Shown piece by piece: positions 2,155 to 15,639 of a DNA stretch of 64,000 nt (position 1 is the stretch's first letter; each line of letters opens with the position of its first letter). The translations under genes and the position numbers were made by a program. The stretch lies in IMG/VR virus record IMGVR_UViG_3300023174_000045, positions 161,081-225,080 of that record. One strand, written 5' to 3'. The notes under the pieces are model-generated. The model worked only from the letters and a program-made list of their open reading frames with translations, searched no databases and was not told the origin of the DNA.

Positions 2155-2159
2155 ACACT

Positions 2160-2320: not shown

Positions 2321-2324
2321 GTGC

Positions 2325-2883: not shown

Positions 2884-2886
2884 CAT

Positions 2887-3214: not shown

Positions 3215-3221
3215 ATTTTGT

Positions 3222-3377: not shown

Positions 3378-3381
3378 ATTT

Positions 3382-3457
3382 GGTCCTAAAGTGTTCATGG
3401 ACGCACGACGGCTTGTCACGCCGTAAGAGTGGGGATCGTTACCCCCTAGGACCGCCA
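3382..3457 (+). tRNA. tRNA-Asp(GTC), atypical T-loop
   Basis: Loop TTGTCAC, T-loop ATCGTTA, CCA. Confidence 0.88.
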
Positions 3458-3463
3458 AGTTTT

Positions 3464-3542
3464 GCAGATAATGGATAGGGCGGGCATCTATTGGTGCCTA
3501 ATACTAGTTGCCGCAGAGGTTCGAGTCCTCTGGTCTGCACCA
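3464..3542 (+). tRNA. Aberrant tRNA-like RNA, possible CTA anticodon
   Basis: Acceptor stem, GGTTCGAGTCC T-arm and ACCA end; 6-bp D-like stem; weak anticodon stem with loop GCCTAAT. Confidence 0.5.
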
Positions 3543-3547
3543 AGTTT

Positions 3548-3647
3548 TTGCGTTATAGTATAGTGGCCAGTACGCAAGGGCCCACACAATGAAAATTGTA
3601 TGGTGGGAATTGCCAGTGTAGCGATGGTTCGATTCCATCTAACGCAA
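3548..3647 (+). ncRNA. tRNA-like RNA with the anticodon arm replaced by a long GAAA-capped helix
   Basis: TTGCGTTA/TAACGCAA acceptor stem, normal D-arm and GGTTCGATTCC T-arm, no CCA. Confidence 0.6.
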
Positions 3648-3653
3648 TATCAT

Positions 3654-3871
3654 TTTTGAGAGTGTCAGCAAGCGCAGTCACGCTATCTAGGTAAGTTCGA
3701 ACTACCGAAATAGTAAAAGGGGACGGGTTCAACTCCCGGGGGATCGGAAGATCCCTGCAGATTGGTTGCTAACTGGACAGGTACCCAAGTGATATCCATC
3801 GCGAGCGAGGTCAGGCTAGGCGGCCGGTAGGTCCTGAATAAATCTACGATAAAAGTGACGTAGGCTCTCAA
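3654..3871 (+). ncRNA. Unidentified multi-stem RNA with T-loop and GNRA hairpins
   Basis: TTTGAGAG/CTCTCAAA closing stem, GTCAC/GTGAC, CGGGTTCAACTCCCG, GGGATC-GGAA-GATCCC. Confidence 0.6.
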
Positions 3872-3880
3872 ATTCAATCG

Positions 3881-3957
3881 GCGACCATAGCTCATTTGGA
3901 TAGAGCACTGTGCTACGAACGCAGGGGTGGGAGGTTCGAATCCTTCTGGTCGCGCCA
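3881..3957 (+). tRNA. tRNA-Arg(ACG)
   Basis: Loop CTACGAA, CCA. Confidence 0.93.
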
Positions 3958-4050
3958 TGTAAAAACACTCTAAACTGGACGCAGGATCTGAGAAGGTTGA
4001 ACGTAGGTTGATCACTACTAGTAAGCTGGAGATCAAGAGTGTTTCTACAT

Positions 4051-4127
4051 GGTGCGTGTCGTCAAGCGGTCAAGACCTCGGATTGTGATTCCGATATGCG
4101 TGGGTTCGAATCCCATCATGCACCCCA
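4051..4127 (+). tRNA. tRNA-His(GTG)
   Basis: Loop TTGTGAT, G-1:C73, CCA. Confidence 0.93.
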
Positions 4128-4150
4128 ACACAAGATAAATAAAAGAATAA

Positions 4151-4225
4151 CGCGGGGTAGAGAAGCAGTAACTCGTTAGGCTCATAACCTAAAGATCGGC
4201 GGTGCGAATCCGTCCTCCGCAACCA
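4151..4225 (+). tRNA. tRNA-fMet(CAT)
   Basis: CGCGGGG start, C1:A72 mismatch, loop CTCATAA. Confidence 0.9.
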
Positions 4226-4241
4226 AATTTTAGGAGTTTTT

Positions 4242-4649
4242 ATGATAGCAATTAACACGGTAATAAAACCGATGGTGGGCCACGAACAAGAAGCAATTGA
4301 CAATTTCTATACTTTTCATAAATCACCACACCCGGAGTTATTTGAATTTTTTAAAGAGTTTGTGGATCAAAATTTAATTTTGAATACGATGTTTTGGCAG
4401 CCATATGATGACCGAAATCTCAATCATTTGCTTAGATACTATGCTGTCAATATGGAAAATGCCGAAATTTTTCAAGAAAAATTATTGAGTGAGTCTGCAG
4501 ATTTTTCAATGAAAAAATTCTGGGATCAAAATAAATTTGACTATTCAATTGAGTTGACAGAAATAAACTTTGATGAAGAATTTCCACAATACTATGTTGT
4601 AGATAATGAGTCTGGTGGAGTTTGGGGAGACGTTTGGCCATTGCTTTGA
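4242..4649 (+). CDS. Hypothetical acidic protein (paralogue of next gene)
   Basis: AGGAG RBS; FFxExxDQNLI, AEIFxEK and FSMKxFW shared with next ORF. Confidence 0.8.
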   Translation: MIAINTVIKPMVGHEQEAIDNFYTFHKSPHPELFEFFKEFVDQNLILNTMFWQPYDDRNLNHLLRYYAVNMENAEIFQEKLLSESADFSMKKFWDQNKFDYSIELTEINFDEEFPQYYVVDNESGGVWGDVWPLL

Positions 4650-5128
4650 TATGCGTTGAAGTTTATTGCAGGCCAACAAAAAAATGTGATTTTGTTGCTG
4701 TTCGATCGTGGACAGAATTTATATGTGCTGAGTATCCAGCGATGTTTGACTTCTTTCAAGAGTGCATTGATCAAAATTTAATTGTGAACAAATTTGCATT
4801 AAATGTAGATGGAGTTACAGACTTATGGAAATACTACTCCTCCAATCAAACTCAAGCTGAAATTTTTCTTGAAAAATTTAAAAATATGCCTTTGAATTTT
4901 TCTAAAGAGAAGTTTTCAATGAAAGAATTTTGGAATCGTTATGAGTTTGAAATTGATATGTCACTCAAAGAAATAGATTTTGACAACGAAAAAGAATTAT
5001 TTGATTTGATAAACAAAGACACCGGTGAGATGTGGGCTACTACATTTCCATTAGGTGGACCGCTTGATAATTATTACCAGTTAGAAAAACATTTTCAGCC
5101 ACAGTGGTTGACAACAAAAGATAAATAA
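4646..5128 (+). CDS. Hypothetical protein (paralogue of previous gene)
   Basis: TTG start overlapping the upstream stop inferred from alignment to the paralogue. Confidence 0.75.
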   Translation: MICVEVYCRPTKKCDFVAVRSWTEFICAEYPAMFDFFQECIDQNLIVNKFALNVDGVTDLWKYYSSNQTQAEIFLEKFKNMPLNFSKEKFSMKEFWNRYEFEIDMSLKEIDFDNEKELFDLINKDTGEMWATTFPLGGPLDNYYQLEKHFQPQWLTTKDK

Positions 5129-5136
5129 ACTATAAT
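5108..5136 (+). promoter_or_regulatory. Consensus sigma70 promoter for leader peptide 2
   Basis: TTGACA-17-TATAAT. Confidence 0.88.
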
Positions 5137-5143
5137 AGGAACT

Positions 5144-5254
5144 ATGATGAAACAACAATTCTGTTCAATGTCCAAGCCCCAAACACTCCAGGCAACAACC
5201 TGGCTGTTGGCCAATGGCTCATTCAACAGCATTCCAGGAGAACCGGGGTTCTGA
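5144..5254 (+). CDS. Putative leader peptide 2 (36 aa)
   Basis: MMKQQFCSMSKPQTLQATTWLLANGSFNSIPGEPGF*; last codons form the antiterminator strand. Confidence 0.65.
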   Translation: MMKQQFCSMSKPQTLQATTWLLANGSFNSIPGEPGF

Positions 5255-5311
5255 TTAGACTATATTCGTATACCTAACAAGAACCCCGGAACTAAACACT
5301 CCGGGGTTTTT
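5243..5311 (+). terminator. Attenuator: mutually exclusive antiterminator and terminator
   Basis: CCGGGGTTCT(5243-52)/AGAACCCCGG(5280-89) competes with AACCCCGGA(5282-90)/TCCGGGGTT(5300-08) plus T tract. Confidence 0.78.
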
Positions 5312-5508
5312 CATTTAGTGCAACGGCAACGCGAGCCGGTATCACTCTAAACTACAAATGTGGGCGGCCCGGAGGATGGGAAGCTGGTGGTGAAAACGCC
5401 AGTGGTAAAATTCCGGAGTATCGAAGCATTCTCGGGCCTTGGGGCAAGTGGGTTCATCCATGAAGAGTGCTTCGATACACACATTGGCAACAGTGTGTTG
5501 AAATTTAT

Positions 5509-5582
5509 TCCGGTGTAGTATAATGGCAGTGCGGCGGTCTCCAAAACCGTTAGTGGGAGTTCGATTCTCTCCACCGGAGCCA
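5509..5582 (+). tRNA. tRNA-Trp(CCA)
   Basis: Loop CTCCAAA, CCA end. Confidence 0.92.
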
Positions 5583-5589
5583 AGTTAAT

Positions 5590-5664
5590 GGGGGGTTGGT
5601 GCTAACGGGAACACATGTGCTTTGCAAGCATGAGTTAAGGGTTCGATTCCCTTACCCTCCACCA
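5590..5664 (+). tRNA. tRNA-Ala(TGC)
   Basis: Loop TTTGCAA, G3.U70. Confidence 0.92.
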
Positions 5665-5686
5665 TAGTCAGTATAAGTATTCACAA

Positions 5687-5776
5687 GGTGCGGTCCTATA
5701 ATGGTATTAGAGCAGATTGCTAATCTGTCGCTCGGCGTAATCCGGGTTCTGAGTTCGAGTCTCAGTCGCACCGCCA
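5687..5776 (+). tRNA. tRNA-Ser(GCT)
   Basis: Loop TTGCTAA, long variable arm. Confidence 0.9.
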
Positions 5777-5783
5777 AGAACAT

Positions 5784-5859
5784 TCCCTCGTAGCACAGCG
5801 GTAGTTGCGCTTCACTGTTAATGAAGATGTCGTTCGTTCGATCCGAACCGAGGGAGCCA
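5784..5859 (+). tRNA. tRNA-Asn(GTT)
   Basis: Loop CTGTTAA. Confidence 0.92.
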
Positions 5860-5877
5860 AATAAAAAAGGAAACGCA

Positions 5878-6060
5878 ATGTCAGCATTTAACACACACAA
5901 CGACCCATTGAAACACAAGACTGGTAAGCCCAGACTTGGTCCAATGAATGTAGAACAGTTGACCCGACTGTTGGAGAGTGCCAGACCCAAACATCGTGCA
6001 AAGATTCAACGTGCCTTGGACTACAAGAAAACAATTCAAAAGATCATAGCAAAGGCTTGA
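5878..6060 (+). CDS. Small basic hypothetical protein
   Basis: AAGGA RBS, MSAFNTHNDPLKHKTGKPRLGP... Confidence 0.75.
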   Translation: MSAFNTHNDPLKHKTGKPRLGPMNVEQLTRLLESARPKHRAKIQRALDYKKTIQKIIAKA

Positions 6061-6065
6061 TATCC

Positions 6066-6139
6066 GCCCTACTAGTATAATGGCATTACACTGGTTTTGT
6101 AATCCTGTGATGGCAGTTCGATTCTGTCGTGGGGCACCA
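6066..6139 (+). tRNA. tRNA-Thr(TGT)
   Basis: Loop TTTGTAA; anticodon stem has two mismatches. Confidence 0.82.
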
Positions 6140-6162
6140 AATTTTTACAAAGGAGATCTGTC

Positions 6163-6201
6163 ATGAGTAGTGACAAGAGTGACAAACCTATGGGGGTATA
6201 A
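6163..6201 (+). CDS. 12-aa mini-ORF ending inside tRNA-Lys
   Basis: AAAGGAG RBS, MSSDKSDKPMGV*. Confidence 0.4.
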   Translation: MSSDKSDKPMGV

Positions 6202-6266
6202 CTTAACGGCTAAAGTAGTGGGCTTTTAACCCATTAATCAGAGTTCGATTCTCTGTGCCCCTACCA
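6192..6266 (+). tRNA. tRNA-Lys(TTT)
   Basis: Loop CTTTTAA. Confidence 0.92.
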
Positions 6267-6338
6267 TATAAAAACACATTAACAGCGTCGTACCGGTCGC
6301 CGGACTTAGGTTGAATTCCTAATAGTGTGTTTCTATAT

Positions 6339-6414
6339 GGTAATATAGCATAGTGGCTAATGCAGTTGCTTCATACGCAACCCACCGTTGGTTCGAGTCC
6401 AACTATTACCACCA
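6339..6414 (+). tRNA. tRNA(CAT), elongator Met or Ile2
   Basis: Loop TTCATAC, paired 1:72. Confidence 0.85.
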
Positions 6415-6420
6415 AGTTTT

Positions 6421-6495
6421 GGCCAGTTAGCTCAGGGGTAGAGCAACGTCTTGATAAGGCGTGGGTCGGTGGTTCGAGACCACCACTGGCTACCA
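6421..6495 (+). tRNA. tRNA-Ile(GAT)
   Basis: Loop TTGATAA. Confidence 0.93.
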
Positions 6496-6502
6496 ATTCA
6501 GT

Positions 6503-6578
6503 TGGGGTGTCGCCTAGAGGCCTAAGGCACTGGTCTTTGAAATCAGTATCATGAGTTCGAATCTCATCTCCCCTGCCA
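6503..6578 (+). tRNA. tRNA-Gln(TTG)
   Basis: Loop CTTTGAA. Confidence 0.9.
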
Positions 6579-6585
6579 AACAACG

Positions 6586-6614
6586 TAGACAAACTTTGAT
6601 GTTTGTTGTATAAT
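6586..6614 (+). promoter_or_regulatory. Internal sigma70 promoter of the tRNA array
   Basis: TAGACA-17-TATAAT. Confidence 0.65.
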
Positions 6615-6622
6615 TACACAAT

Positions 6623-6697
6623 GCGGGATTAACTCAGGGGTAGAGTGTCAGCCTTCCAAGCTGTTCGTCAGCGGTTCGAATCCGCTATCCCGCTCCA
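6623..6697 (+). tRNA. tRNA-Gly(TCC)
   Basis: Loop CTTCCAA, U73. Confidence 0.93.
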
Positions 6698-6717
6698 CTT
6701 TAACAGAAAGAAACAAC

Positions 6718-6924
6718 ATGACAATTGAGAGTGCCGCAACCTTTTTGGTATGTGTAATTTTATTGAGCTGTGGTATCATAGTGCTGGCCGGTCTAGTATT
6801 ATTGATCAACAACCTGTTGCATCGCTACTGGAAAGATCTAAACTGGACTCTACCTGAGAGCATGCAGTCCGTACGTTATGTTGAAGTTGACAAAACTCAA
6901 GAACCCCATTTAGACCGCAAGTAA
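6718..6924 (+). CDS. Small membrane protein
   Basis: One long hydrophobic segment. Confidence 0.7.
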   Translation: MTIESAATFLVCVILLSCGIIVLAGLVLLINNLLHRYWKDLNWTLPESMQSVRYVEVDKTQEPHLDRK

Positions 6925-6975
6925 TACCGACCCCTTGACGGTTTAGGTCCCTTGTACTTGCGGTCTAATTTTTTA

Positions 6976-7049
6976 CTCCGATTGGTGAAATGGTATCATT
7001 CATGGTTTGGGACCATGTGGCGCAAGTTCGATTCTTGCATCGGAGACCA
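6976..7049 (+). tRNA. tRNA-Pro(TGG)
   Basis: Loop TTTGGGA. Confidence 0.92.
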
Positions 7050-7055
7050 TGTAAT

Positions 7056-7133
7056 GCAACGGTGGCAGAGCGGCCCAATGCACGGGATTGCAAATCCCGA
7101 AAACCACTGGTTCAAATCCAGTCCGTTGCTCCA
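7056..7133 (+). tRNA. tRNA-Cys(GCA)
   Basis: Loop TTGCAAA, U73. Confidence 0.92.
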
Positions 7134-7147
7134 ACAAGAAAGTACCT

Positions 7148-7393
7148 ATGTGGGAATATGTTTTAACGTTTTTTGCTGTGTTGTTCACAGATATTTTTTA
7201 TACCTACTACCTAAAAGCAGTACAAGATGAACGTGTGATGGCTGCCAGTGTTTGGGCCACTGTTGTATTTTTGGTAGCCTGCGTAGCAGTGATCAACTAC
7301 ACAACAAATTACTGGTTGCTGATTCCTGCAGGGCTAGGTGCGTTTTGTGGCACTTGGATAGGCATGAGATTACGGGCTCAACAAAAGCAGTAG
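7148..7393 (+). CDS. Small 3-TM membrane protein
   Basis: MWEYVLTFF...GLGAFCGTWIG; start placed after tRNA-Cys. Confidence 0.75.
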   Translation: MWEYVLTFFAVLFTDIFYTYYLKAVQDERVMAASVWATVVFLVACVAVINYTTNYWLLIPAGLGAFCGTWIGMRLRAQQKQ

Positions 7394-7413
7394 TGATCGT
7401 CTATAAATATAGC

Positions 7414-7809
7414 ATGTCCATTTACAATCAGTATTTTTGCCAACATTGTCGTTCTGCGTATTCTAGATCACAAGAAAAATTAACTCCAGGATATTGCAGT
7501 TTGAATTGTTCTGTGGTTGAGTCAAAAAGACAGTCGCAAAAAACTTTCAAAGAACTAACTTTGGAAGACAGAATCAAAAATCGACCTGGTGGCACATATC
7601 TTGAGTACAACAGTGGTATTCCTCCTGAACTGGCTGTAGAAACAACCCCAGTCAAAAGAAGAGAGTACAAATGTGTTTGTTGCGGCATTGCTGATTACAA
7701 TGGCCGTCCGTTGAAACTACAACTGTTTCACCATGACGGTAATCAAAAGAATTTTGACCCAGACAATGTTAAATTTTTGTGTCCAAATTGTTTGAGCCAA
7801 CATCAATAA
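7414..7809 (+). CDS. HNH-endonuclease-like zinc-binding protein, possibly degenerate
   Basis: CxxC pairs, LQLFHHDGN..N....N...LCPNC; the usual final His is Leu; TATAAATA upstream. Confidence 0.7.
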   Translation: MSIYNQYFCQHCRSAYSRSQEKLTPGYCSLNCSVVESKRQSQKTFKELTLEDRIKNRPGGTYLEYNSGIPPELAVETTPVKRREYKCVCCGIADYNGRPLKLQLFHHDGNQKNFDPDNVKFLCPNCLSQHQ

Positions 7810-7815
7810 ATCAAA

Positions 7816-7905
7816 GGAAGTGTGGCAGAGTCCGGCTGATTGCACCTGTCTTGAAAACAGACGGCTCGAAAGGGTCCGTGAGTTCGAATCTCACCGCTTC
7901 CACCA
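7816..7905 (+). tRNA. tRNA-Ser(TGA)
   Basis: Loop CTTGAAA, long variable arm. Confidence 0.92.
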
Positions 7906-7911
7906 AAAATC

Positions 7912-7986
7912 GCCTTGTTAACTCAGCGGTAGAGTAGCGCCTTTACACGGCGAATGTCGGCGGTTCGATCCCGTCACAAGGTACCA
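7912..7986 (+). tRNA. tRNA-Val(TAC)
   Basis: Loop TTTACAC. Confidence 0.92.
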
Positions 7987-7992
7987 ACCAAT

Positions 7993-8068
7993 GGCTCGAT
8001 AGCTCAGTTGGTAGAGCAGTAGACTGAAAATCTATGTGTGGGCGGTTCGATCCCGTCTCGAGCCACCA
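7993..8068 (+). tRNA. tRNA-Phe(GAA)
   Basis: Loop CTGAAAA. Confidence 0.93.
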
Positions 8069-8265
8069 AATGTATTATCCAACACAAACTCATGTTGTTG
8101 TGGTTCAAATATGGGATCGTCTGCATATTGAGGCACAGTGTGTTGGTAAAGAGGATTCACTGTGAATTCTTTGGTTGTGGTCCATGATCGGTTGGGCCTG
8201 TAGGGTTCATGGCTAAATGCGGCATACAGCACCTGCACAGTGTCTCGTAGTTCATATGGAATCAT
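8032..8265 (-). CDS. Antisense hypothetical protein within the tRNA array
   Basis: Fills the Phe-Leu spacer; TAAATA motif 4 nt before ATG as in other genes here. Confidence 0.5.
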   Translation of the reverse strand: MIPYELRDTVQVLYAAFSHEPYRPNRSWTTTKEFTVNPLYQHTVPQYADDPIFEPQQHEFVLDNTFGGSRRDRTAHT

Positions 8266-8277
8266 ATTGTATTTAAT

Positions 8278-8354
8278 GCCCCGGTGATGGAATTGGTATA
8301 CATGCCGGTCTTAGAAGCCGTATTTTAGGAGTTCGAGTCTCCTCTGGGGCACCA
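8278..8354 (+). tRNA. tRNA-Leu(TAG), short variable loop
   Basis: Loop CTTAGAA. Confidence 0.88.
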
Positions 8355-8359
8355 ATTCA

Positions 8360-8434
8360 GGATGTTTAGCACAGCGGTAGTGCATCACCTCGACACGGTG
8401 AGGGTCAGTGGTTCAATTCCACTAACATCCACCA
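8360..8434 (+). tRNA. tRNA-Val(GAC)
   Basis: Loop TCGACAC (C33). Confidence 0.88.
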
Positions 8435-8441
8435 CAAATCT

Positions 8442-8520
8442 GCCCCCATGGACAAATCGGTAAAGTCGTCTCTCTCAAAAGGAGAAGTTGTTCTCTGTTC
8501 GAATCAGAGTGGGGGTACCA
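8442..8520 (+). tRNA. tRNA-Leu(CAA), short variable loop
   Basis: Loop CTCAAAA. Confidence 0.88.
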
Positions 8521-8528
8521 TTCCTAAT

Positions 8529-8605
8529 GCCCTGGTGGCGCAATTGGTAGACGCACCACTTTGAGGGGGTGTACAGTGTGAGTTCGAGTCTCACCCAGGG
8601 CACCA
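8529..8605 (+). tRNA. tRNA-Leu(GAG), short variable loop
   Basis: Loop TTGAGGG. Confidence 0.88.
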
Positions 8606-8606
8606 A

Positions 8607-8635
8607 TTGACAACAAATTCAAAATCAATTACAAT
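8607..8635 (+). promoter_or_regulatory. Internal sigma70 promoter
   Basis: TTGACA-17-TACAAT. Confidence 0.7.
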
Positions 8636-8643
8636 ACACACAC

Positions 8644-8717
8644 GGGCTGTTAGTTAAATGGGATAACTCTGCCATGGCATGGCAGCATCGGGAGTTCGAC
8701 TCTCCCACGGTCCACCA
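8644..8717 (+). tRNA. tRNA-Ala(GGC)
   Basis: Loop ATGGCAT, G3.U70. Confidence 0.92.
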
Positions 8718-8738
8718 CTATCAAGAAAGGAGTCAGTG

Positions 8739-9173
8739 ATGAGTGAATTTAACGTATTGGTTGGCAAGCGCATCAATGGCTTGTTCATAGGCGAAGATGC
8801 TTGGGCCTTGGTGTTTCGCGACATCAATGAACGTTACTATTGTTTTCGCACAGAGAACGATTGTTGCAACGCTGTGTGGTTCAATCACGTAAACGGTGTA
8901 GAAACTGTGCTGGGCGAAGGCAACTTGTTCGATGTCCTGCGTGGTGCCATGGTAACTGCTGTGGAAGACAAAGGCTGGACTGATGATCGCGACGACGAAG
9001 ATGGCTACGAAGTTGTGCAAGATGGTTTCTGGACCATAAAAACAGACCGTGGCTACATAGACTTAGAAGTACGCAACAGTCACAACGGCTACTATGGTGG
9101 CCGTGTGCGGTATGATGAAGAGTCCAAGCCTGGTGACATCAAAGATTTACAAGCAGTGACTGAAGATTTTTAA
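8739..9173 (+). CDS. Conserved phage protein (DCC...SxNGYYG type, DUF7448-like)
   Basis: AAGGAG RBS; DCC and RNSHNGYYGG motifs. Confidence 0.7.
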   Translation: MSEFNVLVGKRINGLFIGEDAWALVFRDINERYYCFRTENDCCNAVWFNHVNGVETVLGEGNLFDVLRGAMVTAVEDKGWTDDRDDEDGYEVVQDGFWTIKTDRGYIDLEVRNSHNGYYGGRVRYDEESKPGDIKDLQAVTEDF

Positions 9174-9250
9174 CGGAATATGGCGCAGCCTGGCAGCGCA
9201 CTTGCATGGGGTGCAAGGGGTCGCAAGTTCGAATCTTGCTATTCCGACCA
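9174..9250 (+). tRNA. tRNA-Pro(GGG)
   Basis: Loop ATGGGGT. Confidence 0.92.
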
Positions 9251-9275
9251 ACTATAAATAACCTTGAAAGTGTAT

Positions 9276-9746
9276 ATGAAAAAACTTGATATAGAACAAG
9301 TGGCCGAATTTATCCGGACTCAAAGTCCAGAAACACGCATCTATCTTGGATGCGACAGTGAACGCATCAAAATTGATGGTGCATGGTGGGCTGACTATGT
9401 GTTGGCCATTGTGGTTCACATCAACGGCAACAACGGTTGCAAACTGTTTGGTGAAGTACATCGTGAACGTGTGTGGGATCAAAAAGCATCCAAGCCGGCC
9501 ATGCGGCTCATGACTGAAGTTTACAAAGTTTCAGAACTGTACTTGAAACTGGCAGAAGTGTTGGAAGGGCGCGATGTTGAAGTTCACTTGGACATCAACC
9601 CTGACGAAATGCACGGATCAAGTTGTGTTGTCAGCCAAGCCATCGGTTACATCAAAGGCACATGTAATGTGATTCCTTTTGTGAAGCCTGAGGCTTTTGC
9701 AGCCAGCTATGCTGCCGACAGATTCAAAGGCTTGCGGGCGGCGTAG
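9276..9746 (+). CDS. RNase H-like YkuK family protein
   Basis: IYLGCDS, RLMTEV, EVHLDIN, ASYAAD motifs; start may be TTG 9264. Confidence 0.8.
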   Translation: MKKLDIEQVAEFIRTQSPETRIYLGCDSERIKIDGAWWADYVLAIVVHINGNNGCKLFGEVHRERVWDQKASKPAMRLMTEVYKVSELYLKLAEVLEGRDVEVHLDINPDEMHGSSCVVSQAIGYIKGTCNVIPFVKPEAFAASYAADRFKGLRAA

Positions 9747-9752
9747 AATATT

Positions 9753-9828
9753 GCGGACGTAGCTCAGTTGGTAGAGCATTACCTTGCCAAGGTAAATGTC
9801 GTCGGTTCGAACCCGATCGTCCGCTCCA
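9753..9828 (+). tRNA. tRNA-Gly(GCC)
   Basis: Loop TTGCCAA. Confidence 0.94.
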
Positions 9829-9842
9829 ACTAAAAAGTTTGT

Positions 9843-10496
9843 ATGATCAATCTACCAAAAGAATTTATCTCTGGGCACAGGTATCTTTTTGTGCATGGGC
9901 AAAGAAGCAGTGATGCTGAATTTGAGGTATGTATTAATGGCAAAACAATCGACAACCCATTTGCAAGCGTTGAACAATTTGATTTAGATCACCCTGATCT
10001 TGGTCCAACGCAGTACGCATTCAGCACTGAAACTTCTTTTTTGGGAGCCAGGACCATCTGCATCAAAATGCTTAAAGGGTCATTGACTTTGACAAGAGCT
10101 AGGGTAAGTTATCCTGCCAAGATAACCAACAGCGAAGGTATTGACTCATTTGGTTACTATTCATTGTTTCAGCCCATTGGTGATCCAAAGTGGCTTGTTA
10201 AGATAAATGGTCAGTTACAAACGCTGGAACCACAAGATCAACATTTAACTGGCGAAGTCCACCACAGCATAACTGCTGGAGATGTCCTAGAATACTATCA
10301 TGTCATGATTGAAGGTCCGAGCCACTGGTGTATTGCCTATTCACAATCTATACACAATGGAATAATTGATCAACAAGATCCCAACATTGAATCTATATTG
10401 CCTATTGATAATCAATCTGGAGTTGATTATCAATCCAGTAACAATCGATTGAACATTTTAAAAAATCAGCTTTTGGCTGATTACAAAAATAGCTGA
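9843..10496 (+). CDS. Hypothetical protein
   Basis: 217-aa ORF filling the Gly-Thr spacer; stop codon inside the tRNA-Thr 5' end. Confidence 0.7.
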   Translation: MINLPKEFISGHRYLFVHGQRSSDAEFEVCINGKTIDNPFASVEQFDLDHPDLGPTQYAFSTETSFLGARTICIKMLKGSLTLTRARVSYPAKITNSEGIDSFGYYSLFQPIGDPKWLVKINGQLQTLEPQDQHLTGEVHHSITAGDVLEYYHVMIEGPSHWCIAYSQSIHNGIIDQQDPNIESILPIDNQSGVDYQSSNNRLNILKNQLLADYKNS

Positions 10497-10566
10497 TGTG
10501 GCACAGTGGTAGCGCACTCCCTTGGTAAGGGAGAGGTCGCGGGTTCAATCCCCGCCATCAGCACCA
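10492..10566 (+). tRNA. tRNA-Thr(GGT)
   Basis: Loop TTGGTAA. Confidence 0.93.
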
Positions 10567-10571
10567 GACAA

Positions 10572-10646
10572 CGGCCTTTGGTGAAATGGATATCATGCTT
10601 GTCTTCGAAACAAGCGGTGGCGGTTCGATCCCGTCAGGGCTGGCCA
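10572..10646 (+). tRNA. tRNA-Arg(TCG)
   Basis: Loop CTTCGAA, CCA; overlaps the convergent CDS end. Confidence 0.85.
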
Positions 10647-11875
10647 TTTAATGCTACAGGCTTACTGGAAAAAGTCTTGTAGTTTAGCACTGTGTAGTTG
10701 TCATACAGTGTCTTATCAACCCAAGGAGTTAGTCCACCGTTGGTAATGTCTCCTATAGACAGAGATGTTTCACCAATGCGATGCGCAACTTCATTCAGCA
10801 CCTCGCCTAACACAGTGCGAATATGAGGGTGCTGTTGTTCCAACACACGCAATACTGGCAGTTCAAACTGCATAAAAAATCCATAGTCCACTTGTTTGTC
10901 TGCTTGCCAGGCTCGCGAATCGAACCCTGGATACAAATGGCACCGCATGGTGTCTTGCACATATCTGCTGAACTTTAATTCAGCCCGATCATTTTCGCTG
11001 GTGGCTTGATTGTGTGCTCTTGCTATCACAGGATCTTGTTTACACAAATTAATCAATTCATACCATCCACGTATGGCCAGTTCAGGCAGGTCTGGTGTCC
11101 AATAAAACGGTTCCCAAATTACATTGTCTGGAAAGCCGTTGCTCCGAGTGCAGTAAGTGTAGTTACGTATCAGTCCTTCGGGGAAGAAGCCTTGATAGGT
11201 GTTGCCTGTTTGCATCACACAAGGTTTGTCCAAGCCCAACATCAGTGCGGCACGACGATTGCCTATGCGCCGTTGCAGTTGCGCATCGGTGGCCACACTG
11301 AGCCAACGTCCAAAGAACACACCTGGTTTGGGACGACTATCCTTGAACACTTGTTCTGCGTCTTTATACGACTCAGCTACACGATCCAACCACTCTATTT
11401 TGATTACACCTGTGCCTGGATGCTCATGTGCATAGCGTTCAGCATAGGGAACGGCATGATACTTGATTTCTCCGTACCAGTTATCTGGATTCAAATTGTT
11501 GAATGGTGTTGAATTTTCCAACTCCTGTGTGACGAACACAATGATGTCATCTATGCGCAGGCCTTGTGCTGAGAAACTTTCAATGATATTGCGACTATCC
11601 CAGCCGCCACTGAACATCACAGCCACATAGTCGTACTGTTCACGTATTTGTCTTGCTCTAGCATAGTAAAGTTCTTTCAAACTTTGATTGCGCCAGTGTC
11701 CTGCTGAATGTGCTTGAGCCCATACATCATCATAGTAATGCCAAGACACTGGTTGACCAGTGCGATGCCCTGCTTCCAGCGCATCTCGGTTTGAGTAAAA
11801 CCAACTGTCGCCCACAGTGTAATGGCCCAGTGGACTGTACAACACTTCACCCACTGAATCTGGAACGTATATCAT
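10634..11875 (-). CDS. PP-loop (adenine nucleotide alpha-hydrolase superfamily) protein
   Basis: VAVMFSGGWDS; ATG 11875 overlaps the upstream stop. Confidence 0.7.
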   Translation of the reverse strand: MIYVPDSVGEVLYSPLGHYTVGDSWFYSNRDALEAGHRTGQPVSWHYYDDVWAQAHSAGHWRNQSLKELYYARARQIREQYDYVAVMFSGGWDSRNIIESFSAQGLRIDDIIVFVTQELENSTPFNNLNPDNWYGEIKYHAVPYAERYAHEHPGTGVIKIEWLDRVAESYKDAEQVFKDSRPKPGVFFGRWLSVATDAQLQRRIGNRRAALMLGLDKPCVMQTGNTYQGFFPEGLIRNYTYCTRSNGFPDNVIWEPFYWTPDLPELAIRGWYELINLCKQDPVIARAHNQATSENDRAELKFSRYVQDTMRCHLYPGFDSRAWQADKQVDYGFFMQFELPVLRVLEQQHPHIRTVLGEVLNEVAHRIGETSLSIGDITNGGLTPWVDKTLYDNYTVLNYKTFSSKPVALNGQP

Positions 11876-12777
11876 GCTAGTAAGAACTCCCGAACACGAT
11901 CCAGTGCTGACTGATAACCATGTTCCCACAGTGCAAAGTGTGTGGCACCGGGTATGGTATACGTTTGCAACTCAGCCATAGCAAAATATTCACATGCGCG
12001 ATCAAACCAATCTTGCGGAACATCCACATCATGTTCGCCACGAGTAAACAAAATTGGCACCCCGGCCAATGCGTCCACATCAAAGCCATGATTGTCATGC
12101 AACAAGGGCCAGTTGATCCTGTCCAACCACCATGTTCTAGGTGCAGTCCACGAATCCAAGTTGTAAGAAGTATAGTCTTGTGTGAGTCTTTGCATTTCCT
12201 TGTACCAAGAATCCACACGCTGTGGCTTGCCTATTTCACGATCACTGATTTTATTGAGTTGTTGCTCTACCAGCATATCCAAACTGGTACTCCAGTAGCC
12301 CGATTCAGTAGCAGTACGTTGCCACAGTCGTATCATAGCAGGGTGTTGTTGGCACCAGGTGGTATCAAACACCGTAGGGCTCATTACCACAGCACGATTG
12401 ACCACGCCTTGTGCAGCCAGCACCAGTGGGACCATGGTGGTGTTGCAGAAGCCTAGTGCGGCAATGTTATTGTACCCAGGCAAGGTTTCAGTCACAGCCG
12501 CAATCTGTTCAGCAAAGTAAATTCTATTGTAGTCAGGGCGCGACACACCTGTGCTGTTGCCAAATCCCAAAGCATCTACCATGTACACATCCACACCTTG
12601 TTCAGCCAATTGTTCAGCATGTGTTGTACCTGTGCCTGGATCAAAATGCCAAAAGTTTCTGCCACTCATTGAACGGCCAGGTAAGATTATCACAGCACGT
12701 TGATTGTTGGGTGCAGTGACTCGGTGAACATAAATGTTCCCTGATTCAAACGGTACGTAATAGTGTGGAATAACCAT
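11872..12777 (-). CDS. Alpha/beta-hydrolase fold protein
   Basis: DALGFGNS, RGEHD, IPGATHF; nucleophile elbow reads GFCNT. Confidence 0.8.
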   Translation of the reverse strand: MVIPHYYVPFESGNIYVHRVTAPNNQRAVIILPGRSMSGRNFWHFDPGTGTTHAEQLAEQGVDVYMVDALGFGNSTGVSRPDYNRIYFAEQIAAVTETLPGYNNIAALGFCNTTMVPLVLAAQGVVNRAVVMSPTVFDTTWCQQHPAMIRLWQRTATESGYWSTSLDMLVEQQLNKISDREIGKPQRVDSWYKEMQRLTQDYTSYNLDSWTAPRTWWLDRINWPLLHDNHGFDVDALAGVPILFTRGEHDVDVPQDWFDRACEYFAMAELQTYTIPGATHFALWEHGYQSALDRVREFLLA

Positions 12778-13615
12778 CCAGTGTCCAGGCTTTTTGTATG
12801 AGTTTTTTCAGTGTGTACTGTTCAGGTGACACTGAAAACTTTTGAGATTCAAATTCAGTAACAGGCACAATGTCTCCAGCTGTGCTGGTAACAAACATGT
12901 CAGTGGCAGCTTCTAGCATGCCCGCATCAATGTCTGAATATTTATAGTTGATACCATGAGCATCACACAACTGTTGCACAAGATGCATGGTAATTCCGCC
13001 CAGTACGTTTTGTCGTGGTATGTGTATGACTGAATCAATGACCACAGCCACATTAAATCCAGGTCCTTCAGTCAAATGCCCATTGTGATCCAACAGCACT
13101 GCACTGTCATATCCACGGTCTTGGGCCTGCCATTGGCTTTGTGTTAGATCTTGCCAGGCCCAGTTTTTGTAACTCTGATTGATAGATGTTGAAGGAACTC
13201 GTTGAGTTGTGCTCAAGCACAGTCTAGCAGAGTTGGCCACATTGAATCCGTAATAGGGTTTGACATAGGCCATGACTTGTGTGTTGCAACGGGTTAAGTC
13301 TCTAGGGTTACCTGAATCAGGAATACCTCTTGTGACCACAAACCAAACAAACGCTGATTCTAATTTGCTACGGTTGTATAACTCTGCCACCACGGTTTTT
13401 AATTCTTCACTGGTGTACAGCAAAGGCAATCGCCAACCACGACAACTGTTCTCTAATCTGTTGATATGTTGATTGAGTTGTAATGCTCGGCCATGTTTGA
13501 CTGCCAACACGTCATAGGTGGCATCTGAGTGTACCACACCCAGATCCATGATGCTCAAGGAGAGATCGGCAAGATTGCAATAGGTTCCATTGCGCCAGGC
13601 AGGAAAGTTGTTCAT
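12746..13615 (-). CDS. PLP fold-type IV aminotransferase
   Basis: DLGVVHSDATYDV, HINRL, KNWAW (PLP Lys), TEGPGFN, LGGIT, FVTSTAG. Confidence 0.9.
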   Translation of the reverse strand: MNNFPAWRNGTYCNLADLSLSIMDLGVVHSDATYDVLAVKHGRALQLNQHINRLENSCRGWRLPLLYTSEELKTVVAELYNRSKLESAFVWFVVTRGIPDSGNPRDLTRCNTQVMAYVKPYYGFNVANSARLCLSTTQRVPSTSINQSYKNWAWQDLTQSQWQAQDRGYDSAVLLDHNGHLTEGPGFNVAVVIDSVIHIPRQNVLGGITMHLVQQLCDAHGINYKYSDIDAGMLEAATDMFVTSTAGDIVPVTEFESQKFSVSPEQYTLKKLIQKAWTLDGYSTLLRTV

Positions 13616-13778
13616 GATATATTATATAATAAATTTTGGTAAAACGCAATAGAAAATGCCAAACATCAACATTAAAAAATACAATGGCAAAAACCGTAGA
13701 TCTCCACTATAGACATGCTATATACTAGTGTTAATACTAATAGACTTAGTATTTCATTCATTAACACAAGGAGATAAA

Positions 13779-14312
13779 ATGAAAACAGTTGGCGATAAAA
13801 TTGAAAAGTTTGCAGTGACCGGAATCAACCCTGGTAAAGATGATTTCTTTACTATCACAGATGAGAGTTTTGCCGGCAAGTGGAAAGTGATTGCTTTCTA
13901 TCCCAAAGACTTTACATTTGTTTGCCCCACAGAGATTGTGGCCTATGACAAGTTGAACTCGGACTTTGCTGACCGTGATGCTGTATTGCTTACAGGTAGC
14001 ACAGACAATGAGTTCTGCAAACTAGCATGGCAACGTAGTCATGAAGACTTGAGCAAGATCACCCACATTCAGTTTGCTGACACACAGCGTGGTGAACTCA
14101 GTTTGGTTGAACAACTGGGTGTGTTCTTTGCACCAGCAGGTGCGGCACTTCGTGCTACATTCATTGTGGACCCAGACAATGTGATCCAACACGTGACTGT
14201 GAACAACTTGAATGTTGGTCGTAGCCCAGAAGAATCTTTGCGTATTTTGGACGCATTGCAAACTGGCGAACTGTGTGCTTGTAACCGTACTGTGGGCGGG
14301 GAGACACTGTAA
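13779..14312 (+). CDS. ahpC: Peroxiredoxin AhpC
   Basis: FYPKDFTFVCPTEI, VGRS, GELC; AAGGAG RBS. Confidence 0.95.
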   Translation: MKTVGDKIEKFAVTGINPGKDDFFTITDESFAGKWKVIAFYPKDFTFVCPTEIVAYDKLNSDFADRDAVLLTGSTDNEFCKLAWQRSHEDLSKITHIQFADTQRGELSLVEQLGVFFAPAGAALRATFIVDPDNVIQHVTVNNLNVGRSPEESLRILDALQTGELCACNRTVGGETL

Positions 14313-14818
14313 TGGCATTCATTGACTCCGTAAAGGAAGCGTTGCCAGACTACGCCAAGGACACCAAGTTAAATCTTGACGCTGTTCTTTTGCGTAGTAC
14401 TTTGGATGCAGATGTGGCCATGGGTTGTGCTGTGGCCGCACTGGCTGCAACTGGTAACGGTAAAATCCTATCAGTAATTTTAGCAGATGCTCCAGTACAT
14501 GCAGAGTCAGCAATGACAGCGGCTAGTATCATGGCACAGAACAATGTATGGTATCCATATGTTGAAATGGCAGATGATCCTGCATTAAAAGGTTTACCGG
14601 CAGGATTGCGCATGAATGCTATTGCGTCACATGGTGGAACTACCAAATCAAACTTTGAGGCGTTTAGCCTTGCTGCCAGCATTGTGGGCAAGTGTCACTT
14701 CTGTGTGAAAGCACACTACGAAACGCTCAAGCAAGAAGGTTACACAGTTGAACAGCTTCGTGACATTGGAAGAATTGCAGCCGTAATGAATTCGGTTGCC
14801 AAAGTTTTAAACGCTTGA
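14312..14818 (+). CDS. ahpD: Alkyl hydroperoxide reductase AhpD
   Basis: LPDYAKDTKLNL, MAQNNVWY, CHFCVKAH. Confidence 0.93.
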   Translation: MAFIDSVKEALPDYAKDTKLNLDAVLLRSTLDADVAMGCAVAALAATGNGKILSVILADAPVHAESAMTAASIMAQNNVWYPYVEMADDPALKGLPAGLRMNAIASHGGTTKSNFEAFSLAASIVGKCHFCVKAHYETLKQEGYTVEQLRDIGRIAAVMNSVAKVLNA

Positions 14819-15083: not shown

Positions 15084-15376
15084 GCAACGAATTAGCCCGA
15101 TTTGTCAACAGCCGACGGCGACACAAAACTGATGTGGCTGTGGCCAGGCAAGTCAAGATTGCTCGAGCACACAATAGTACTTCAGATGTTAAGCAACCAC
15201 ATCGACTTGCAAAACGTCATGCCATGGACTGTGGTAACCCGCAATGTTACTTGTGTGGCAACCCACGCAAGACACACAAAGACAAACTGACACAACAAGA
15301 AAAACGCTTGTTCCAAGACTTGGAACAACAAACAGATCGACATTCAAACGGATTATCAACCAAGGAAGAACCATGA
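15080..15376 (+). CDS. Basic protein with CxxxxCxxC motif
   Basis: DCGNPQCYLCGNPRK. Confidence 0.75.
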   Translation: MSNELARFVNSRRRHKTDVAVARQVKIARAHNSTSDVKQPHRLAKRHAMDCGNPQCYLCGNPRKTHKDKLTQQEKRLFQDLEQQTDRHSNGLSTKEEP

Positions 15377-15639
15377 AGCACCCAGCAGACAGAACAGCCG
15401 GCCTCAACTCAGAACTAGCAGTGGAGATGATTGGCAACAGATACAATTTGATCCTAGCTGGCGCCCGCCGCATGAGAGAACTCAGTCGTGGTGACTTGCC
15501 TAAAATCACACTTAAATTTCCACACAGTGCAGGCGTCACAGCCATGCTGGAAATTGAAGCTGGCAAGATTGGCAAGGATTATATCTATCGTGAAACAGAA
15601 GTTCAACCACGACGCCGCAACAAGCAACAACCCTTGTAA
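15373..15639 (+). CDS. rpoZ: RNA polymerase omega subunit homologue
   Basis: AVEMIGNRYNLILAGARRMREL...VTAMLEIEAGKI aligns with E. coli [22 protein letters not shown]...VIALREIEEGLI. Confidence 0.85.
   Translation: MKHPADRTAGLNSELAVEMIGNRYNLILAGARRMRELSRGDLPKITLKFPHSAGVTAMLEIEAGKIGKDYIYRETEVQPRRRNKQQPL

What the first reader, a model, noticed from the sequence alone, without database searches (positions are those of the whole stretch)
10634..13649. Three-gene biosynthetic-looking operon: fold-IV transaminase, Cys-elbow hydrolase and PP-loop ATPase
Seen: overlapping genes behind a leaderless promoter (TTGCGT-17-TATAAT), convergent on the tRNA array and overlapping tRNA-Arg by 13 nt. The transaminase has HSDATYDV and KNxxWxDL, resembling (R)-amine transaminases more than IlvE. 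The hydrolase has GFCNT instead of GxSxG. PP-loop enzymes adenylate substrates for amide or thio transfer, including tRNA modification. Inference: an undescribed phage pathway that makes an amine and ligates it to a tRNA, nucleotide or glycan.
Basis: partly seen in the sequence, partly recalled or inferred. Interest (0 to 1): 0.6.

Follow-up and report, generated by a model that had tools for sequence, protein, structure and literature searches.

The report
Phage transaminase–hydrolase–adenylating enzyme operon
A 225-kb freshwater phage carries three tightly overlapping enzyme genes, each from a family found almost only in viruses, that probably make or reshape a small nitrogen-containing carboxylic acid rather than modify tRNA.

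Summary
Three minus-strand genes overlap (32 nt, then ATGA) and end 13 nt inside tRNA-Arg. Two corrections apply. The third gene most likely starts at ATG 11875 (413 aa). The "leaderless promoter" is one of several equally weak candidates.

- **Gene 1** is a fold-IV aminotransferase. It meets the published (R)-amine-transaminase motifs. It scores about 1e-43 against solved (R)-ATAs, about 1e-29 against BCATs, and far below the IlvE cut-offs.
- **Gene 2** is an α/β-hydrolase with a Cys111-Asp250-His280 triad. Relatives carry Ser at that position.
- **Gene 3** has no Pfam, NCBIfam, PHROG or PDB sequence match. A confident model (pLDDT 94) is a PP-loop fold closest to asparagine, β-lactam and carbapenam synthetases (Z 9–12). 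It founds a viral family of about 1,750 clusters.

Across viral contigs the transaminase is followed by the hydrolase in 28 of 32 distinct loci. The PP-loop family usually sits beside secreted Bug/TctC carboxylate-binding proteins (30 of 53). It joins transaminase and hydrolase in at least three separate arrangements.

The best reading is a small-molecule amine/carboxylate amide-forming module whose substrate is unknown. A tRNA, nucleotide or glycan target is not supported. This is a new variant of known enzyme kinds.

The parts
13621..13649 (-). Promoter-like element: TTGCGT (13649-13644), 17-nt spacer, TATAAT (13626-13621), ending 5 nt before the ATG. No Shine-Dalgarno sequence.
   Evidence: Read from the sequence. 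The -35 matches only 3 of 6 positions and was not listed by the scan, which offers alternatives at 13734-13706 and 13662-13633. It is conserved in L093, L010 and L011 along with the whole spacer. Function is not shown.
12746..13615 (-). Fold-type-IV PLP aminotransferase of (R)-amine-transaminase type, 289 aa. Key residues: Lys150, His29, Tyr34, Val36, Phe-Val-Trp91, loop Arg105.
   Evidence: PF01063, E 1e-33. Best solved relatives are (R)-ATAs 8zm7, 4ce5 and 3wwh at E 1e-43 to 1e-37, against BCATs at about 1e-29 and DAAT at 1e-16. NCBIfam IlvE and DAAT scores are far below their cut-offs. The motif residues are invariant in 22 homologues. Motif definitions come from PMC8048526.
11872..12777 (-). 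α/β-hydrolase with a helical cap, 301 aa. The nucleophile elbow G-F-C111-N-T carries Cys, with Asp250 and His280 completing the triad.
   Evidence: PF00561, E 1e-10. AF2 model pLDDT 79.6, with Cys111 after strand 104-110, Asp250 after strand 241-247 and His280 after strand 269-275. Foldseek E about 1e-12 and VIA Z about 22 to many capped α/β-hydrolases. Cys111 aligns with the nucleophile Ser of γ-lactamase 1hkh. In 32 distinct family members the position is Ser in 27 and Cys in 5, while Asp and His are present in all 32.
10634..11875 (-). PP-loop ATP-pyrophosphatase-fold protein, 413 aa. It has SGGWDS at residues 89-94, further conserved G-x-D-K-P and F-Y-W-T-P-D motifs, and an N-terminal domain of about 80 aa. 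It belongs to a virus-restricted family closest in fold to asparagine, β-lactam and carbapenam synthetases.
   Evidence: No Pfam, NCBIfam or PHROG hit. No PDB sequence hit even with profiles. AF2 pLDDT 93.9. VIA Z is 12.3 for AsnS 9b6c, 11.9 for AsnB 1ct9, 10.0 for β-LS 1jgt and 9.2 for CarA and TsnB9. Other PP-loop enzymes score Z 5.3-7.4. The family has 1,750 clusters at 50% identity. Atlas clusters are 100% viral.
10572..10646 (+). tRNA-Arg(tcg), the last gene of the convergent array of 31 tRNAs plus a tmRNA. Its 3' end overlaps the last 13 nt of gene 3.
   Evidence: ARAGORN and the sequence itself.

Best explanation
The three genes form a co-transcribed, translationally coupled enzyme module that acts on a small amino- or keto-carboxylic acid.

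1. The fold-IV PLP enzyme interconverts a carbonyl and an amine with (R)/D stereochemistry, probably using D-alanine/pyruvate as co-substrates. This is inferred from its (R)-amine-transaminase active-site motifs.
2. The α/β-hydrolase uses a Cys111-His280-Asp250 triad to form an acyl-thioester intermediate. It thereby unmasks a carboxylate from an ester, amide or thioester, or transfers the acyl group. This step is inferred.
3. The PP-loop enzyme adenylates a carboxylate (acyl-AMP plus PPi). A nitrogen nucleophile then attacks to give an amide or lactam; that nucleophile could be ammonia or the amine made in step 1, acting between or within molecules. This follows the chemistry of its nearest structural neighbours. 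It is inferred.

What is shown: the enzyme classes, the catalytic residues, the gene overlaps and the recurrent co-occurrence. What is not known: the substrate, the product and the benefit to the phage.
For: Gene identities and catalytic residues.

Overlaps of 32 nt and ATGA.

Conservation:
- The same transaminase-hydrolase-PP-loop order occurs in related contigs of 146-240 kb (L010, L011, L015, L016, L093).
- The transaminase is followed directly by the hydrolase in 28 of 32 distinct IMG/VR loci, at only 43-50% transaminase identity.
- PP-loop family members join these genes in three further arrangements. In L100, L118, L131 and L129 the order is transaminase, hydrolase, a 249-aa ORF, then a distant PP-loop paralogue. 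In L101 a PP-loop gene overlaps the transaminase, which is followed by a BesC-like di-iron oxidase. In L110, L122 and L127 a PP-loop gene lies 2-4 kb away.
- In L137 the transaminase is followed by an unrelated ANL-type adenylating fragment.

Evidence for small-carboxylate substrates:
- 30 of 53 distinct PP-loop genes abut a Bug/TctC solute-binding protein with a signal peptide.
- The family is acidic to neutral and has no conserved Cys.
- Its fold neighbours adenylate carboxylates.
Against: - No substrate can be named.
- In most genomes the transaminase+hydrolase pair and the PP-loop gene occur apart. PP-loop orthologues at 63-64% identity (L018-L023) have TctC rather than the hydrolase upstream, and L006, L007 and L014 lack the transaminase. 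The trio may therefore be a recent fusion of two modules.
- Gene overlaps are common in phages whatever the function.
- PP-loop genes are multi-copy in these phages, so proximity can arise by chance.
- The hydrolase fold matches are generic.
- No sequence-level link to AsnB could be made.
Confidence: 0.45

Rival explanations
1. Two unrelated auxiliary modules lie side by side: a transaminase+hydrolase pair, and a PP-loop enzyme that has lost its Bug/TctC partner. They were packed together in a variable island and do not share a pathway.
For: The pair and the PP-loop gene are usually separate. The third gene after the pair is mostly an unrelated basic 367-aa protein. PP-loop orthologues at 63% identity keep TctC upstream. 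L006 and L007 lack the transaminase. The neighbouring redox genes are also swapped between relatives.
Against: PP-loop family members adjoin the transaminase and/or hydrolase in at least three different gene orders and lineages. The ATGA coupling is kept throughout the window's clade. The Ser-to-Cys change in the hydrolase occurs only in the clade where it is fused to the PP-loop gene.
Confidence: 0.3
2. The genes serve amino-acid or nitrogen salvage for phage protein synthesis. The transaminase recycles D-amino acids or branched-chain amino acids. The hydrolase acts as a peptidase or esterase. The PP-loop protein is an ammonia-dependent asparagine synthetase analogue.
For: AsnS and AsnB are the top fold matches. 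The solved Bug protein nearest to the phage binding proteins is BugD. The genome invests heavily in translation, with 31 tRNAs and a tmRNA.
Against: IlvE and DAAT models score far below their cut-offs, and the D-ATA carboxylate trap (YxQ, RxH) is absent. Several divergent PP-loop/TctC pairs occur per phage genome, which argues against a single housekeeping reaction. There is no sequence similarity to AsnB.
Confidence: 0.12
3. This is the first reader's idea: the PP-loop enzyme adenylates a base in a tRNA, nucleotide or glycan (TilS- or QueC-like), and the transaminase-made amine is attached to it.
For: The genes lie next to a large tRNA array. TilS, QueC and tRNA thiolases are weak fold neighbours at Z 5.6-6.6.
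Against: In relatives the same trio is followed by a DesA-type desaturase, not tRNAs. The window protein has pI 5.7 (family median 6.5) and the family has no conserved Cys. AsnB-type matches cover about 290 residues, against about 170 for tRNA enzymes. The family's usual partner is a secreted carboxylate-binding protein.
Confidence: 0.07
4. This is a peptide macrolactam (lasso- or RiPP-like) system. The AsnB-like enzyme cyclises a small peptide and the Cys hydrolase acts as the leader peptidase.
For: By established knowledge, lasso-peptide cyclases are AsnB homologues. A conserved ORF of 53-54 aa follows PP-loop genes in some distant loci.
Against: There is no small ORF in the window, because a tRNA follows directly. 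The small ORFs are not detectably related between lineages. A transaminase and secreted binding proteins do not fit a RiPP system.
Confidence: 0.03

Closest known systems
(R)-selective amine transaminases of PLP fold type IV (for example Aspergillus terreus 4ce5, Arthrobacter 3wwh, and bacterial enzymes in PMC8048526)
   Same: Pairwise E is 1e-43 to 1e-37 over nearly the full length. The catalytic Lys in K-N-x-x-W-x-D-L is present. Motif 1, H-x4-Y-x-V-x-A, is present. The active-site-loop Arg is present. As in some bacterial (R)-ATAs, there is no N-terminal helix.
   Different: Motif 2 is F-V-W rather than [FY]-V-[EANQ]; Trp occurs there in only about 3% of putative (R)-ATAs. The subfamily is virus-restricted, with one hit among the genomes of 185,579 prokaryote species. 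It has a conserved hydrolase partner. Activity is untested.
Asparagine synthetase B, β-lactam synthetase and carbapenam synthetase (AsnB-type PP-loop synthetase domain)
   Same: They are the best structural matches: Z 12.3, 11.9, 10.0 and 9.2 over 237-294 residues. The SGGxDS PP-loop is present. A Gly/acidic motif and an aromatic-Pro-Asp motif lie at spacings similar to AsnB's motifs; this positional comparison is my own, made from memory of AsnB.
   Different: There is no Ntn glutaminase domain, only an N-terminal domain of about 80 aa. No sequence or profile similarity is detectable. The family is viral only. It is typically paired with secreted Bug/TctC binding proteins.
Capped α/β-hydrolases (epoxide hydrolases, haloalkane and fluoroacetate dehalogenases, esterases, PhaZ, thioesterase domains)
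   Same: The fold and cap match at Z about 22 over 250-279 residues. The nucleophile, acid and His sit at the canonical positions.
   Different: The elbow is G-F-(S/C)-(T/N)-(S/T)-T rather than G-x-S-x-G. The window's clade has Cys as the nucleophile. No specific subfamily stands out. All homologues found so far come from metagenomic assemblies or viral contigs.
Bug/TctC solute-binding proteins of tripartite tricarboxylate transporters
   Same: The usual neighbours of the PP-loop family in other phages match PF03401 and solved Bug proteins (BugD at 2e-11). They carry signal peptides.
   Different: None is present in this genome. Here the hydrolase occupies that position upstream of the PP-loop gene.

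Membership tests
(R)-selective amine transaminase (fold type IV) | Fold-IV PLP domain with a catalytic Lys | tested here: met
   PF01063, E 1e-33. Lys150 aligns with the catalytic Lys of 8zm7 and 4ce5 and is invariant in 22 homologues.
(R)-selective amine transaminase (fold type IV) | Motif 1: [HR]-x4-Y-x-[VT]-x-[HSAPT] | tested here: met
   His29, Tyr34, Val36 and Ala38 fit the motif. His29, Tyr34 and Val36 are invariant in the family. The motif is as quoted in PMC8048526.
(R)-selective amine transaminase (fold type IV) | Motif 2: [YF]-V-[EANQ] | tested here: inconclusive
   The sequence is F-V-W91, with Trp invariant. It fails the strict motif but fits the extended motif [YF]-[VIC]-[EAQSNWMD] of PMC8048526.
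(R)-selective amine transaminase (fold type IV) | Absence of the BCAT (YxR), D-ATA (YxQ plus RxH) and ADCL signatures | tested here: met
   The position reads F-V-W. The loop reads G-N-P-R-D-L-T-R-C, with no RxH.
(R)-selective amine transaminase (fold type IV) | Transamination of (R)-amines that lack an α-carboxylate | not testable with these tools
   This needs an enzyme assay.
Branched-chain amino-acid aminotransferase (IlvE) | Score at or above the curated equivalog cut-off | tested here: not met
   TIGR01122 scores 108 bits against a cut-off of 245. NF006185 scores 114 bits against 363.
α/β-hydrolase superfamily | α/β fold with the nucleophile-acid-His triad at canonical positions | tested here: met
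   The model and DSSP place Cys111, Asp250 and His280 at those positions. Z is about 22. Asp and His are present in 32 of 32 members, and the nucleophile is Ser or Cys in all 32.
α/β-hydrolase superfamily | G-x-S-x-G nucleophile elbow | tested here: not met
   The elbow is G-F-C-N-T here and G-F-S-T-S/T in relatives. The final Gly is missing in all 32 members.
PP-loop ATP pyrophosphatase (adenine nucleotide α-hydrolase superfamily) | SGGxDS loop on a Rossmann-like fold | tested here: met
   Ser89 and Asp93 are invariant in 48 diverse members, and Gly90, Gly91 and Ser94 are at least 90% conserved. All top fold matches are PP-loop enzymes.
Asparagine synthetase B / β-lactam synthetase family | Sequence-profile membership (PF00733, TIGR01536) | tested here: not met
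   None of the 48 members hits Pfam. There is no PDB profile hit. hhalign against E. coli AsnB gives probability 2%.
Asparagine synthetase B / β-lactam synthetase family | N-terminal Ntn-type (class II) glutaminase domain | tested here: not met
   Only about 80 residues precede the PP-loop, and there is no N-terminal Cys.
Asparagine synthetase B / β-lactam synthetase family | Synthetase-domain fold | tested here: met
   Z is 12.3, 11.9, 10.0 and 9.2 over 237-294 residues. This stands above other PP-loop enzymes at Z 7.4 or less.
PP-loop sulfurtransferases (ThiI, MnmA, TtcA, TtuA, LarE) | Conserved catalytic or Fe-S-ligand cysteines | tested here: not met
   No alignment column has Cys in 30% or more of the 48 members.

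The most novel reading that the evidence does not exclude
Large freshwater phages carry a virus-specific toolkit for small-molecule nitrogen chemistry. AsnB-like adenylating enzymes receive their substrates in one of two ways: from phage-encoded periplasmic Bug/TctC binding proteins that hijack host uptake, or, as here, from an (R)-amine transaminase plus a Cys/Ser hydrolase. The product would be a non-proteinogenic amino-acid amide or lactam, such as an antimetabolite, signal or trapped nutrient, that benefits the infection. This would also give (R)-amine transaminases a natural role.
Probability: 0.15. Interest if true: 0.8.

Novelty: new variant of a known kind. Interest (0 to 1): 0.6.

Why it matters
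- (R)-selective amine transaminases are prized biocatalysts. Here a virus-restricted clade comes with a conserved partner gene, which makes a natural role experimentally approachable.
- Gene 3 reveals a large viral family of PP-loop enzymes: about 1,750 clusters at 50% identity, with no Pfam, PHROG or NCBIfam model.
- That family's habitual pairing with secreted carboxylate-binding proteins suggests phages couple host nutrient uptake to ATP-dependent chemical trapping. I found no description of this.
- If the trio makes a defined metabolite, it would add a new class of phage-encoded small-molecule biosynthesis.

Tried and rejected
- **DNA search.** A megablast of the region and a tblastn of gene 3 against 50,697 phage records found nothing. 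The transaminase hit only bacterial-type IlvE genes at 21-26% identity, in phage-labelled and bacterial records of the collection.
- **Complex prediction.** The hydrolase with the PP-loop protein scored 0.00 and gave no verdict. This is not evidence either way.
- **RNA evidence for the promoter.** Only two freshwater runs were found, each holding 7% of the words and kept as contigs. These cannot show a transcript start.
- **The 367-aa gene after transaminase+hydrolase in other phages.** I tested whether it is a PP-loop analogue. hhalign gave probability 0.5%. It has no Pfam or NCBIfam family, pI 9.4, and is separated by 40-90 nt. I judged it an unrelated neighbouring gene.
- **Sequence link to E. 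coli AsnB.** hhalign gave probability 2%. It aligned only a short N-terminal stretch to the end of AsnB's glutaminase domain. This is a lead, not a result.
- **Hydrolase subfamily.** Foldseek and VIA lists are flat, with Z 21-23 for epoxide hydrolases, dehalogenases, esterases and PhaZ. No subfamily was assigned.
- **Literature.** Searches for TctC or PP-loop genes in phages, and for phage class-IV aminotransferases, found nothing relevant.
- **DesA-type desaturase downstream in relatives.** It matches NF049918 at 6e-123 and is absent from this genome. I treat it as a separate auxiliary gene.
Full report
**Setting.** The window is the last 64 kb of a single 225,080-bp contig with 44.8% G+C. 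It carries a tmRNA and 31 tRNAs at 1430-10646 on the plus strand. PHROG matches to phage ATPase, HNH endonuclease, radical-SAM and virion proteins mark it as a large phage. The nearest cultured phages, judged by an AAA ATPase, are Pseudomonas jumbo phage PA5oct and its kin at 52% identity. Close relatives of the three genes come from metagenome assemblies, and the only sequencing runs that hold part of the region are labelled freshwater metagenome. Standard code 11 reads the genome well: stop-to-stop frames of at least 150 codons cover 90% of it.

**The observation.**
- The transaminase (12746-13615) and hydrolase (11872-12777) overlap by 32 nt.
- The hydrolase stop and an ATG at 11875 form ATGA.
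- All database homologues of the third protein are called from that ATG, giving 413 aa. I therefore place its start at 11875, not at the upstream GTG 11929.
- Its TGA stop (10634-10636) lies 13 nt inside tRNA-Arg(tcg), 10572-10646.
- The quoted promoter (TTGCGT, 17 nt, TATAAT, 5 nt, ATG) is present and no Shine-Dalgarno sequence precedes the ATG.
- Its -35 element is weak, matching at 3 of 6 positions. The AT-rich spacer holds other candidates of equal or better score. The count of promoter-like sites (11) is not clearly above shuffles (7.4 +/- 2.9).
- The element is conserved in relatives, but so is the whole spacer.
- Leaderless expression is a fair hypothesis only. No usable RNA data exist.

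**Gene 1, the transaminase.**
- It matches PF01063 at 1e-33. IlvE, DAAT and ADCL equivalog models all score far below their cut-offs.
- Against solved structures, the 26 best hits (E 3e-43 to 4e-33) are (R)-selective or otherwise amine-forming transaminases, some deposited under BCAT names. Archaeal and bacterial BCATs follow at about 1e-29, DAAT at 1e-16 and E. coli IlvE at 8e-13.
- Using the motif rules quoted in PMC8048526, the protein has motif 1 (His29-x4-Tyr34-x-Val36-x-Ala38) and lacks the BCAT YxR, the D-ATA YxQ/RxH and the ADCL signatures.
- It has the catalytic Lys150 in K-N-W-A-W-Q-D-L and an Arg in the active-site loop.
- Motif 2 reads F-V-W. This falls outside the strict [FY]-V-[EANQ] but inside the extended motif.
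- These residues are invariant in 22 homologues down to 43% identity.
- The subfamily is nearly virus-only. A pattern scan of one genome for each of 185,579 prokaryote species found a single hit.

**Gene 2, the hydrolase.**
- It matches PF00561 at 1e-10.
- The model (pLDDT 79.6) is a capped α/β-hydrolase. Cys111 sits at the strand-turn-helix elbow, Asp250 after the seventh strand and His280 after the last.
- Fold matches are strong but generic: Foldseek E about 1e-12 and VIA Z 21-23 to epoxide hydrolases, dehalogenases, esterases, PhaZ and thioesterase domains.
- A profile alignment puts Cys111 opposite the nucleophile Ser of γ-lactamase 1hkh.
- In 32 distinct family members, Asp and His are invariant. 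The nucleophile is Ser in 27 and Cys in 5.
- The five with Cys are exactly the window's clade, where the gene is fused to the PP-loop gene.
- Cys is thus a recent replacement of a catalytic Ser, not an inactivation.

**Gene 3, the PP-loop protein.**
- Nothing matches it in Pfam, NCBIfam or PHROGs, for this protein or for 48 diverse relatives. Profile searches of the PDB also found nothing.
- An AF2 model built on 34 homologues is confident, with pLDDT 93.9 and pTM 0.92.
- Foldseek gives only weak hits (E 1e-3 or worse), but all are PP-loop enzymes.
- The exhaustive VIA search ranks human asparagine synthetase first (Z 12.3, 293 residues). E. coli AsnB follows at 11.9, then β-lactam synthetase at 10.0, then TsnB9 and carbapenam synthetase at 9.2.
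- NAD and GMP synthetases, PAPS reductases, LarE, TilS, QueC and tRNA thiolases score Z 5.3-7.4 over about 170 residues.
- Ser89 and Asp93 of the SGGxDS loop are invariant, and the family also conserves G-x-D-K-P and F-Y-W-T-P-D motifs.
- No Cys is conserved, and the proteins are acidic to neutral: pI 5.7 here, family median 6.5. This argues against sulfur transfer and against RNA binding.
- The family is large, with 1,750 clusters at 50% identity, of which 1,435 score at or below 1e-10.
- In the ESM Atlas its clusters are 100% viral.

**Genomic company of the transaminase.**
- The window's gene order recurs in contigs of 70-240 kb: L010, L011, L015, L016 and L093. There it is followed by a DesA-family desaturase instead of tRNAs.
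- L006, L007 and L014 keep the hydrolase and the PP-loop gene but lack the transaminase.
- In 47 IMG/VR loci found with the transaminase, it is followed directly by the hydrolase in 28 of 32 distinct loci. The two genes usually overlap by 20-30 nt, at only 43-50% transaminase identity.
- The next gene there is mostly a basic 367-aa protein. It shows no relation to the PP-loop family and lies 40-90 nt away, so I treat it as an unrelated neighbour.

**Genomic company of the PP-loop family.**
- The family was found in 221 IMG/VR stretches.
- In 30 of 53 distinct cases it abuts a PF03401 Bug/TctC solute-binding protein, often with overlap and often as two or three tandem pairs.
- Nearly all of those proteins begin with a typical signal peptide. 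They match solved Bug proteins, with BugD at 2e-11.
- PP-loop orthologues at 63-64% identity to the window's still have TctC upstream. Those at 75% or more have the hydrolase.

**Links between the two modules.** Three further arrangements join them.
- In L100, L118, L131 and L129 the order is transaminase, hydrolase, a 249-aa ORF, then a distant PP-loop paralogue with the same N-terminal domain. hhalign gives probability 91% at E 1e-6, and jackhmmer started from it recovers 110 family members.
- In L101 a PP-loop gene overlaps the transaminase, which is followed by a BesC-like di-iron oxidase at 1.3e-64.
- In L110, L122 and L127 a PP-loop gene lies 2-4 kb away.
- In L137 an ANL-type adenylating fragment follows the transaminase.
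- Neighbours in these islands are 2OG-Fe(II) oxygenases and methyltransferases.
- The window's own genome has one copy of each of the three genes. It has no TctC, no desaturase and no 367-aa protein.

**Interpretation.**
- Shown: three enzyme classes with intact catalytic residues, tight coupling, and recurrent association.
- Inferred: the PP-loop family works on small carboxylic acids. Its fold neighbours adenylate carboxylates, and its usual partner is a periplasmic carboxylate-binding protein, which cannot form a cytoplasmic complex but can define what enters the cell.
- In the window's clade, a hydrolase takes the position of that partner. A hydrolase can generate a free carboxylate inside the cell, and the transaminase can supply or remove an amine of (R)/D configuration.
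- The simplest chemistry is to unmask the carboxylate, set the amine, adenylate, and close an amide or lactam.
- I give this 0.45. The main rival, two modules merely juxtaposed, gets 0.30. Amino-acid salvage gets 0.12, nucleic-acid modification 0.07 and a RiPP system 0.03.
- A predicted hydrolase/PP-loop complex gave no verdict.

**Comparison and novelty.** Each protein belongs to a known superfamily.
- The transaminase passes most (R)-ATA membership tests.
- The hydrolase passes the fold and triad tests but not the GxSxG test.
- The third protein is a PP-loop fold that fails every sequence-based test for the AsnB family and lacks its glutaminase domain. It works like an AsnB-type synthetase at best and should not be filed as one.
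- I found no description of the operon, the viral PP-loop family or its pairing with secreted binding proteins.
- I rate it a new variant of a known kind, with interest 0.6.

Noticed in passing
window 3464-3542 (+): ARAGORN calls a tRNA with anticodon CTA (labelled tRNA-Pyl), which is an amber-suppressor-type tRNA, inside the array. TAG ends only 20 of 214 long frames in the genome, and code 11 reads the genome well, so wholesale recoding is not indicated.
   Followed up: partly
window 13779-14818 (+): A peroxiredoxin (AhpC/TSA, 8.6e-22) and an AhpD-like CMD protein (9e-12) are transcribed divergently from the operon. At the same position, related phages carry rubrerythrin plus rubredoxin instead. 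This is a swap of antioxidant genes.
   Followed up: partly
L001-L092 (IMG/VR and metagenome loci): Large phage contigs carry tandem pairs of signal-peptide-bearing Bug/TctC solute-binding proteins and PP-loop family genes, up to three pairs in 13 kb. Fatty-acid-desaturase-like genes often lie nearby, with four in L062.
   Followed up: partly
L140 1617-2483 (+): The only cellular hit for the transaminase subfamily is in a Candidatus Peribacteria MAG contig. That contig reads only under code 25: in-frame TGA falls at conserved Gly positions. The gene sits between pheS and the ribosomal-protein operon, with no hydrolase next to it.
   Followed up: partly
window 44514-51091 (-) and 38287-39774 (-): There is a run of at least three radical-SAM-like proteins (565, 447 and 465 aa) among overlapping genes. 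A Nol-like carbamoyltransferase (2e-92) lies nearby. This looks like another biosynthetic cluster.
   Followed up: no
window 15244-15639 (+): A 131-aa ORF sits where relatives carry a gene matching RNA_pol_Rpb6, the omega-subunit family (seen in L006, L007 and L010).
   Followed up: no
window 57819-63962 (-): A very long ORF of 2,047 aa runs almost to the window end. It was not examined.
   Followed up: no
L101 6819-7580 (+): A phage gene resembling BesC, the heme-oxygenase-like di-iron oxidase of the terminal-alkyne amino-acid pathway (1.3e-64, below the equivalog cut-off), directly follows a PP-loop gene and the transaminase.
   Followed up: no
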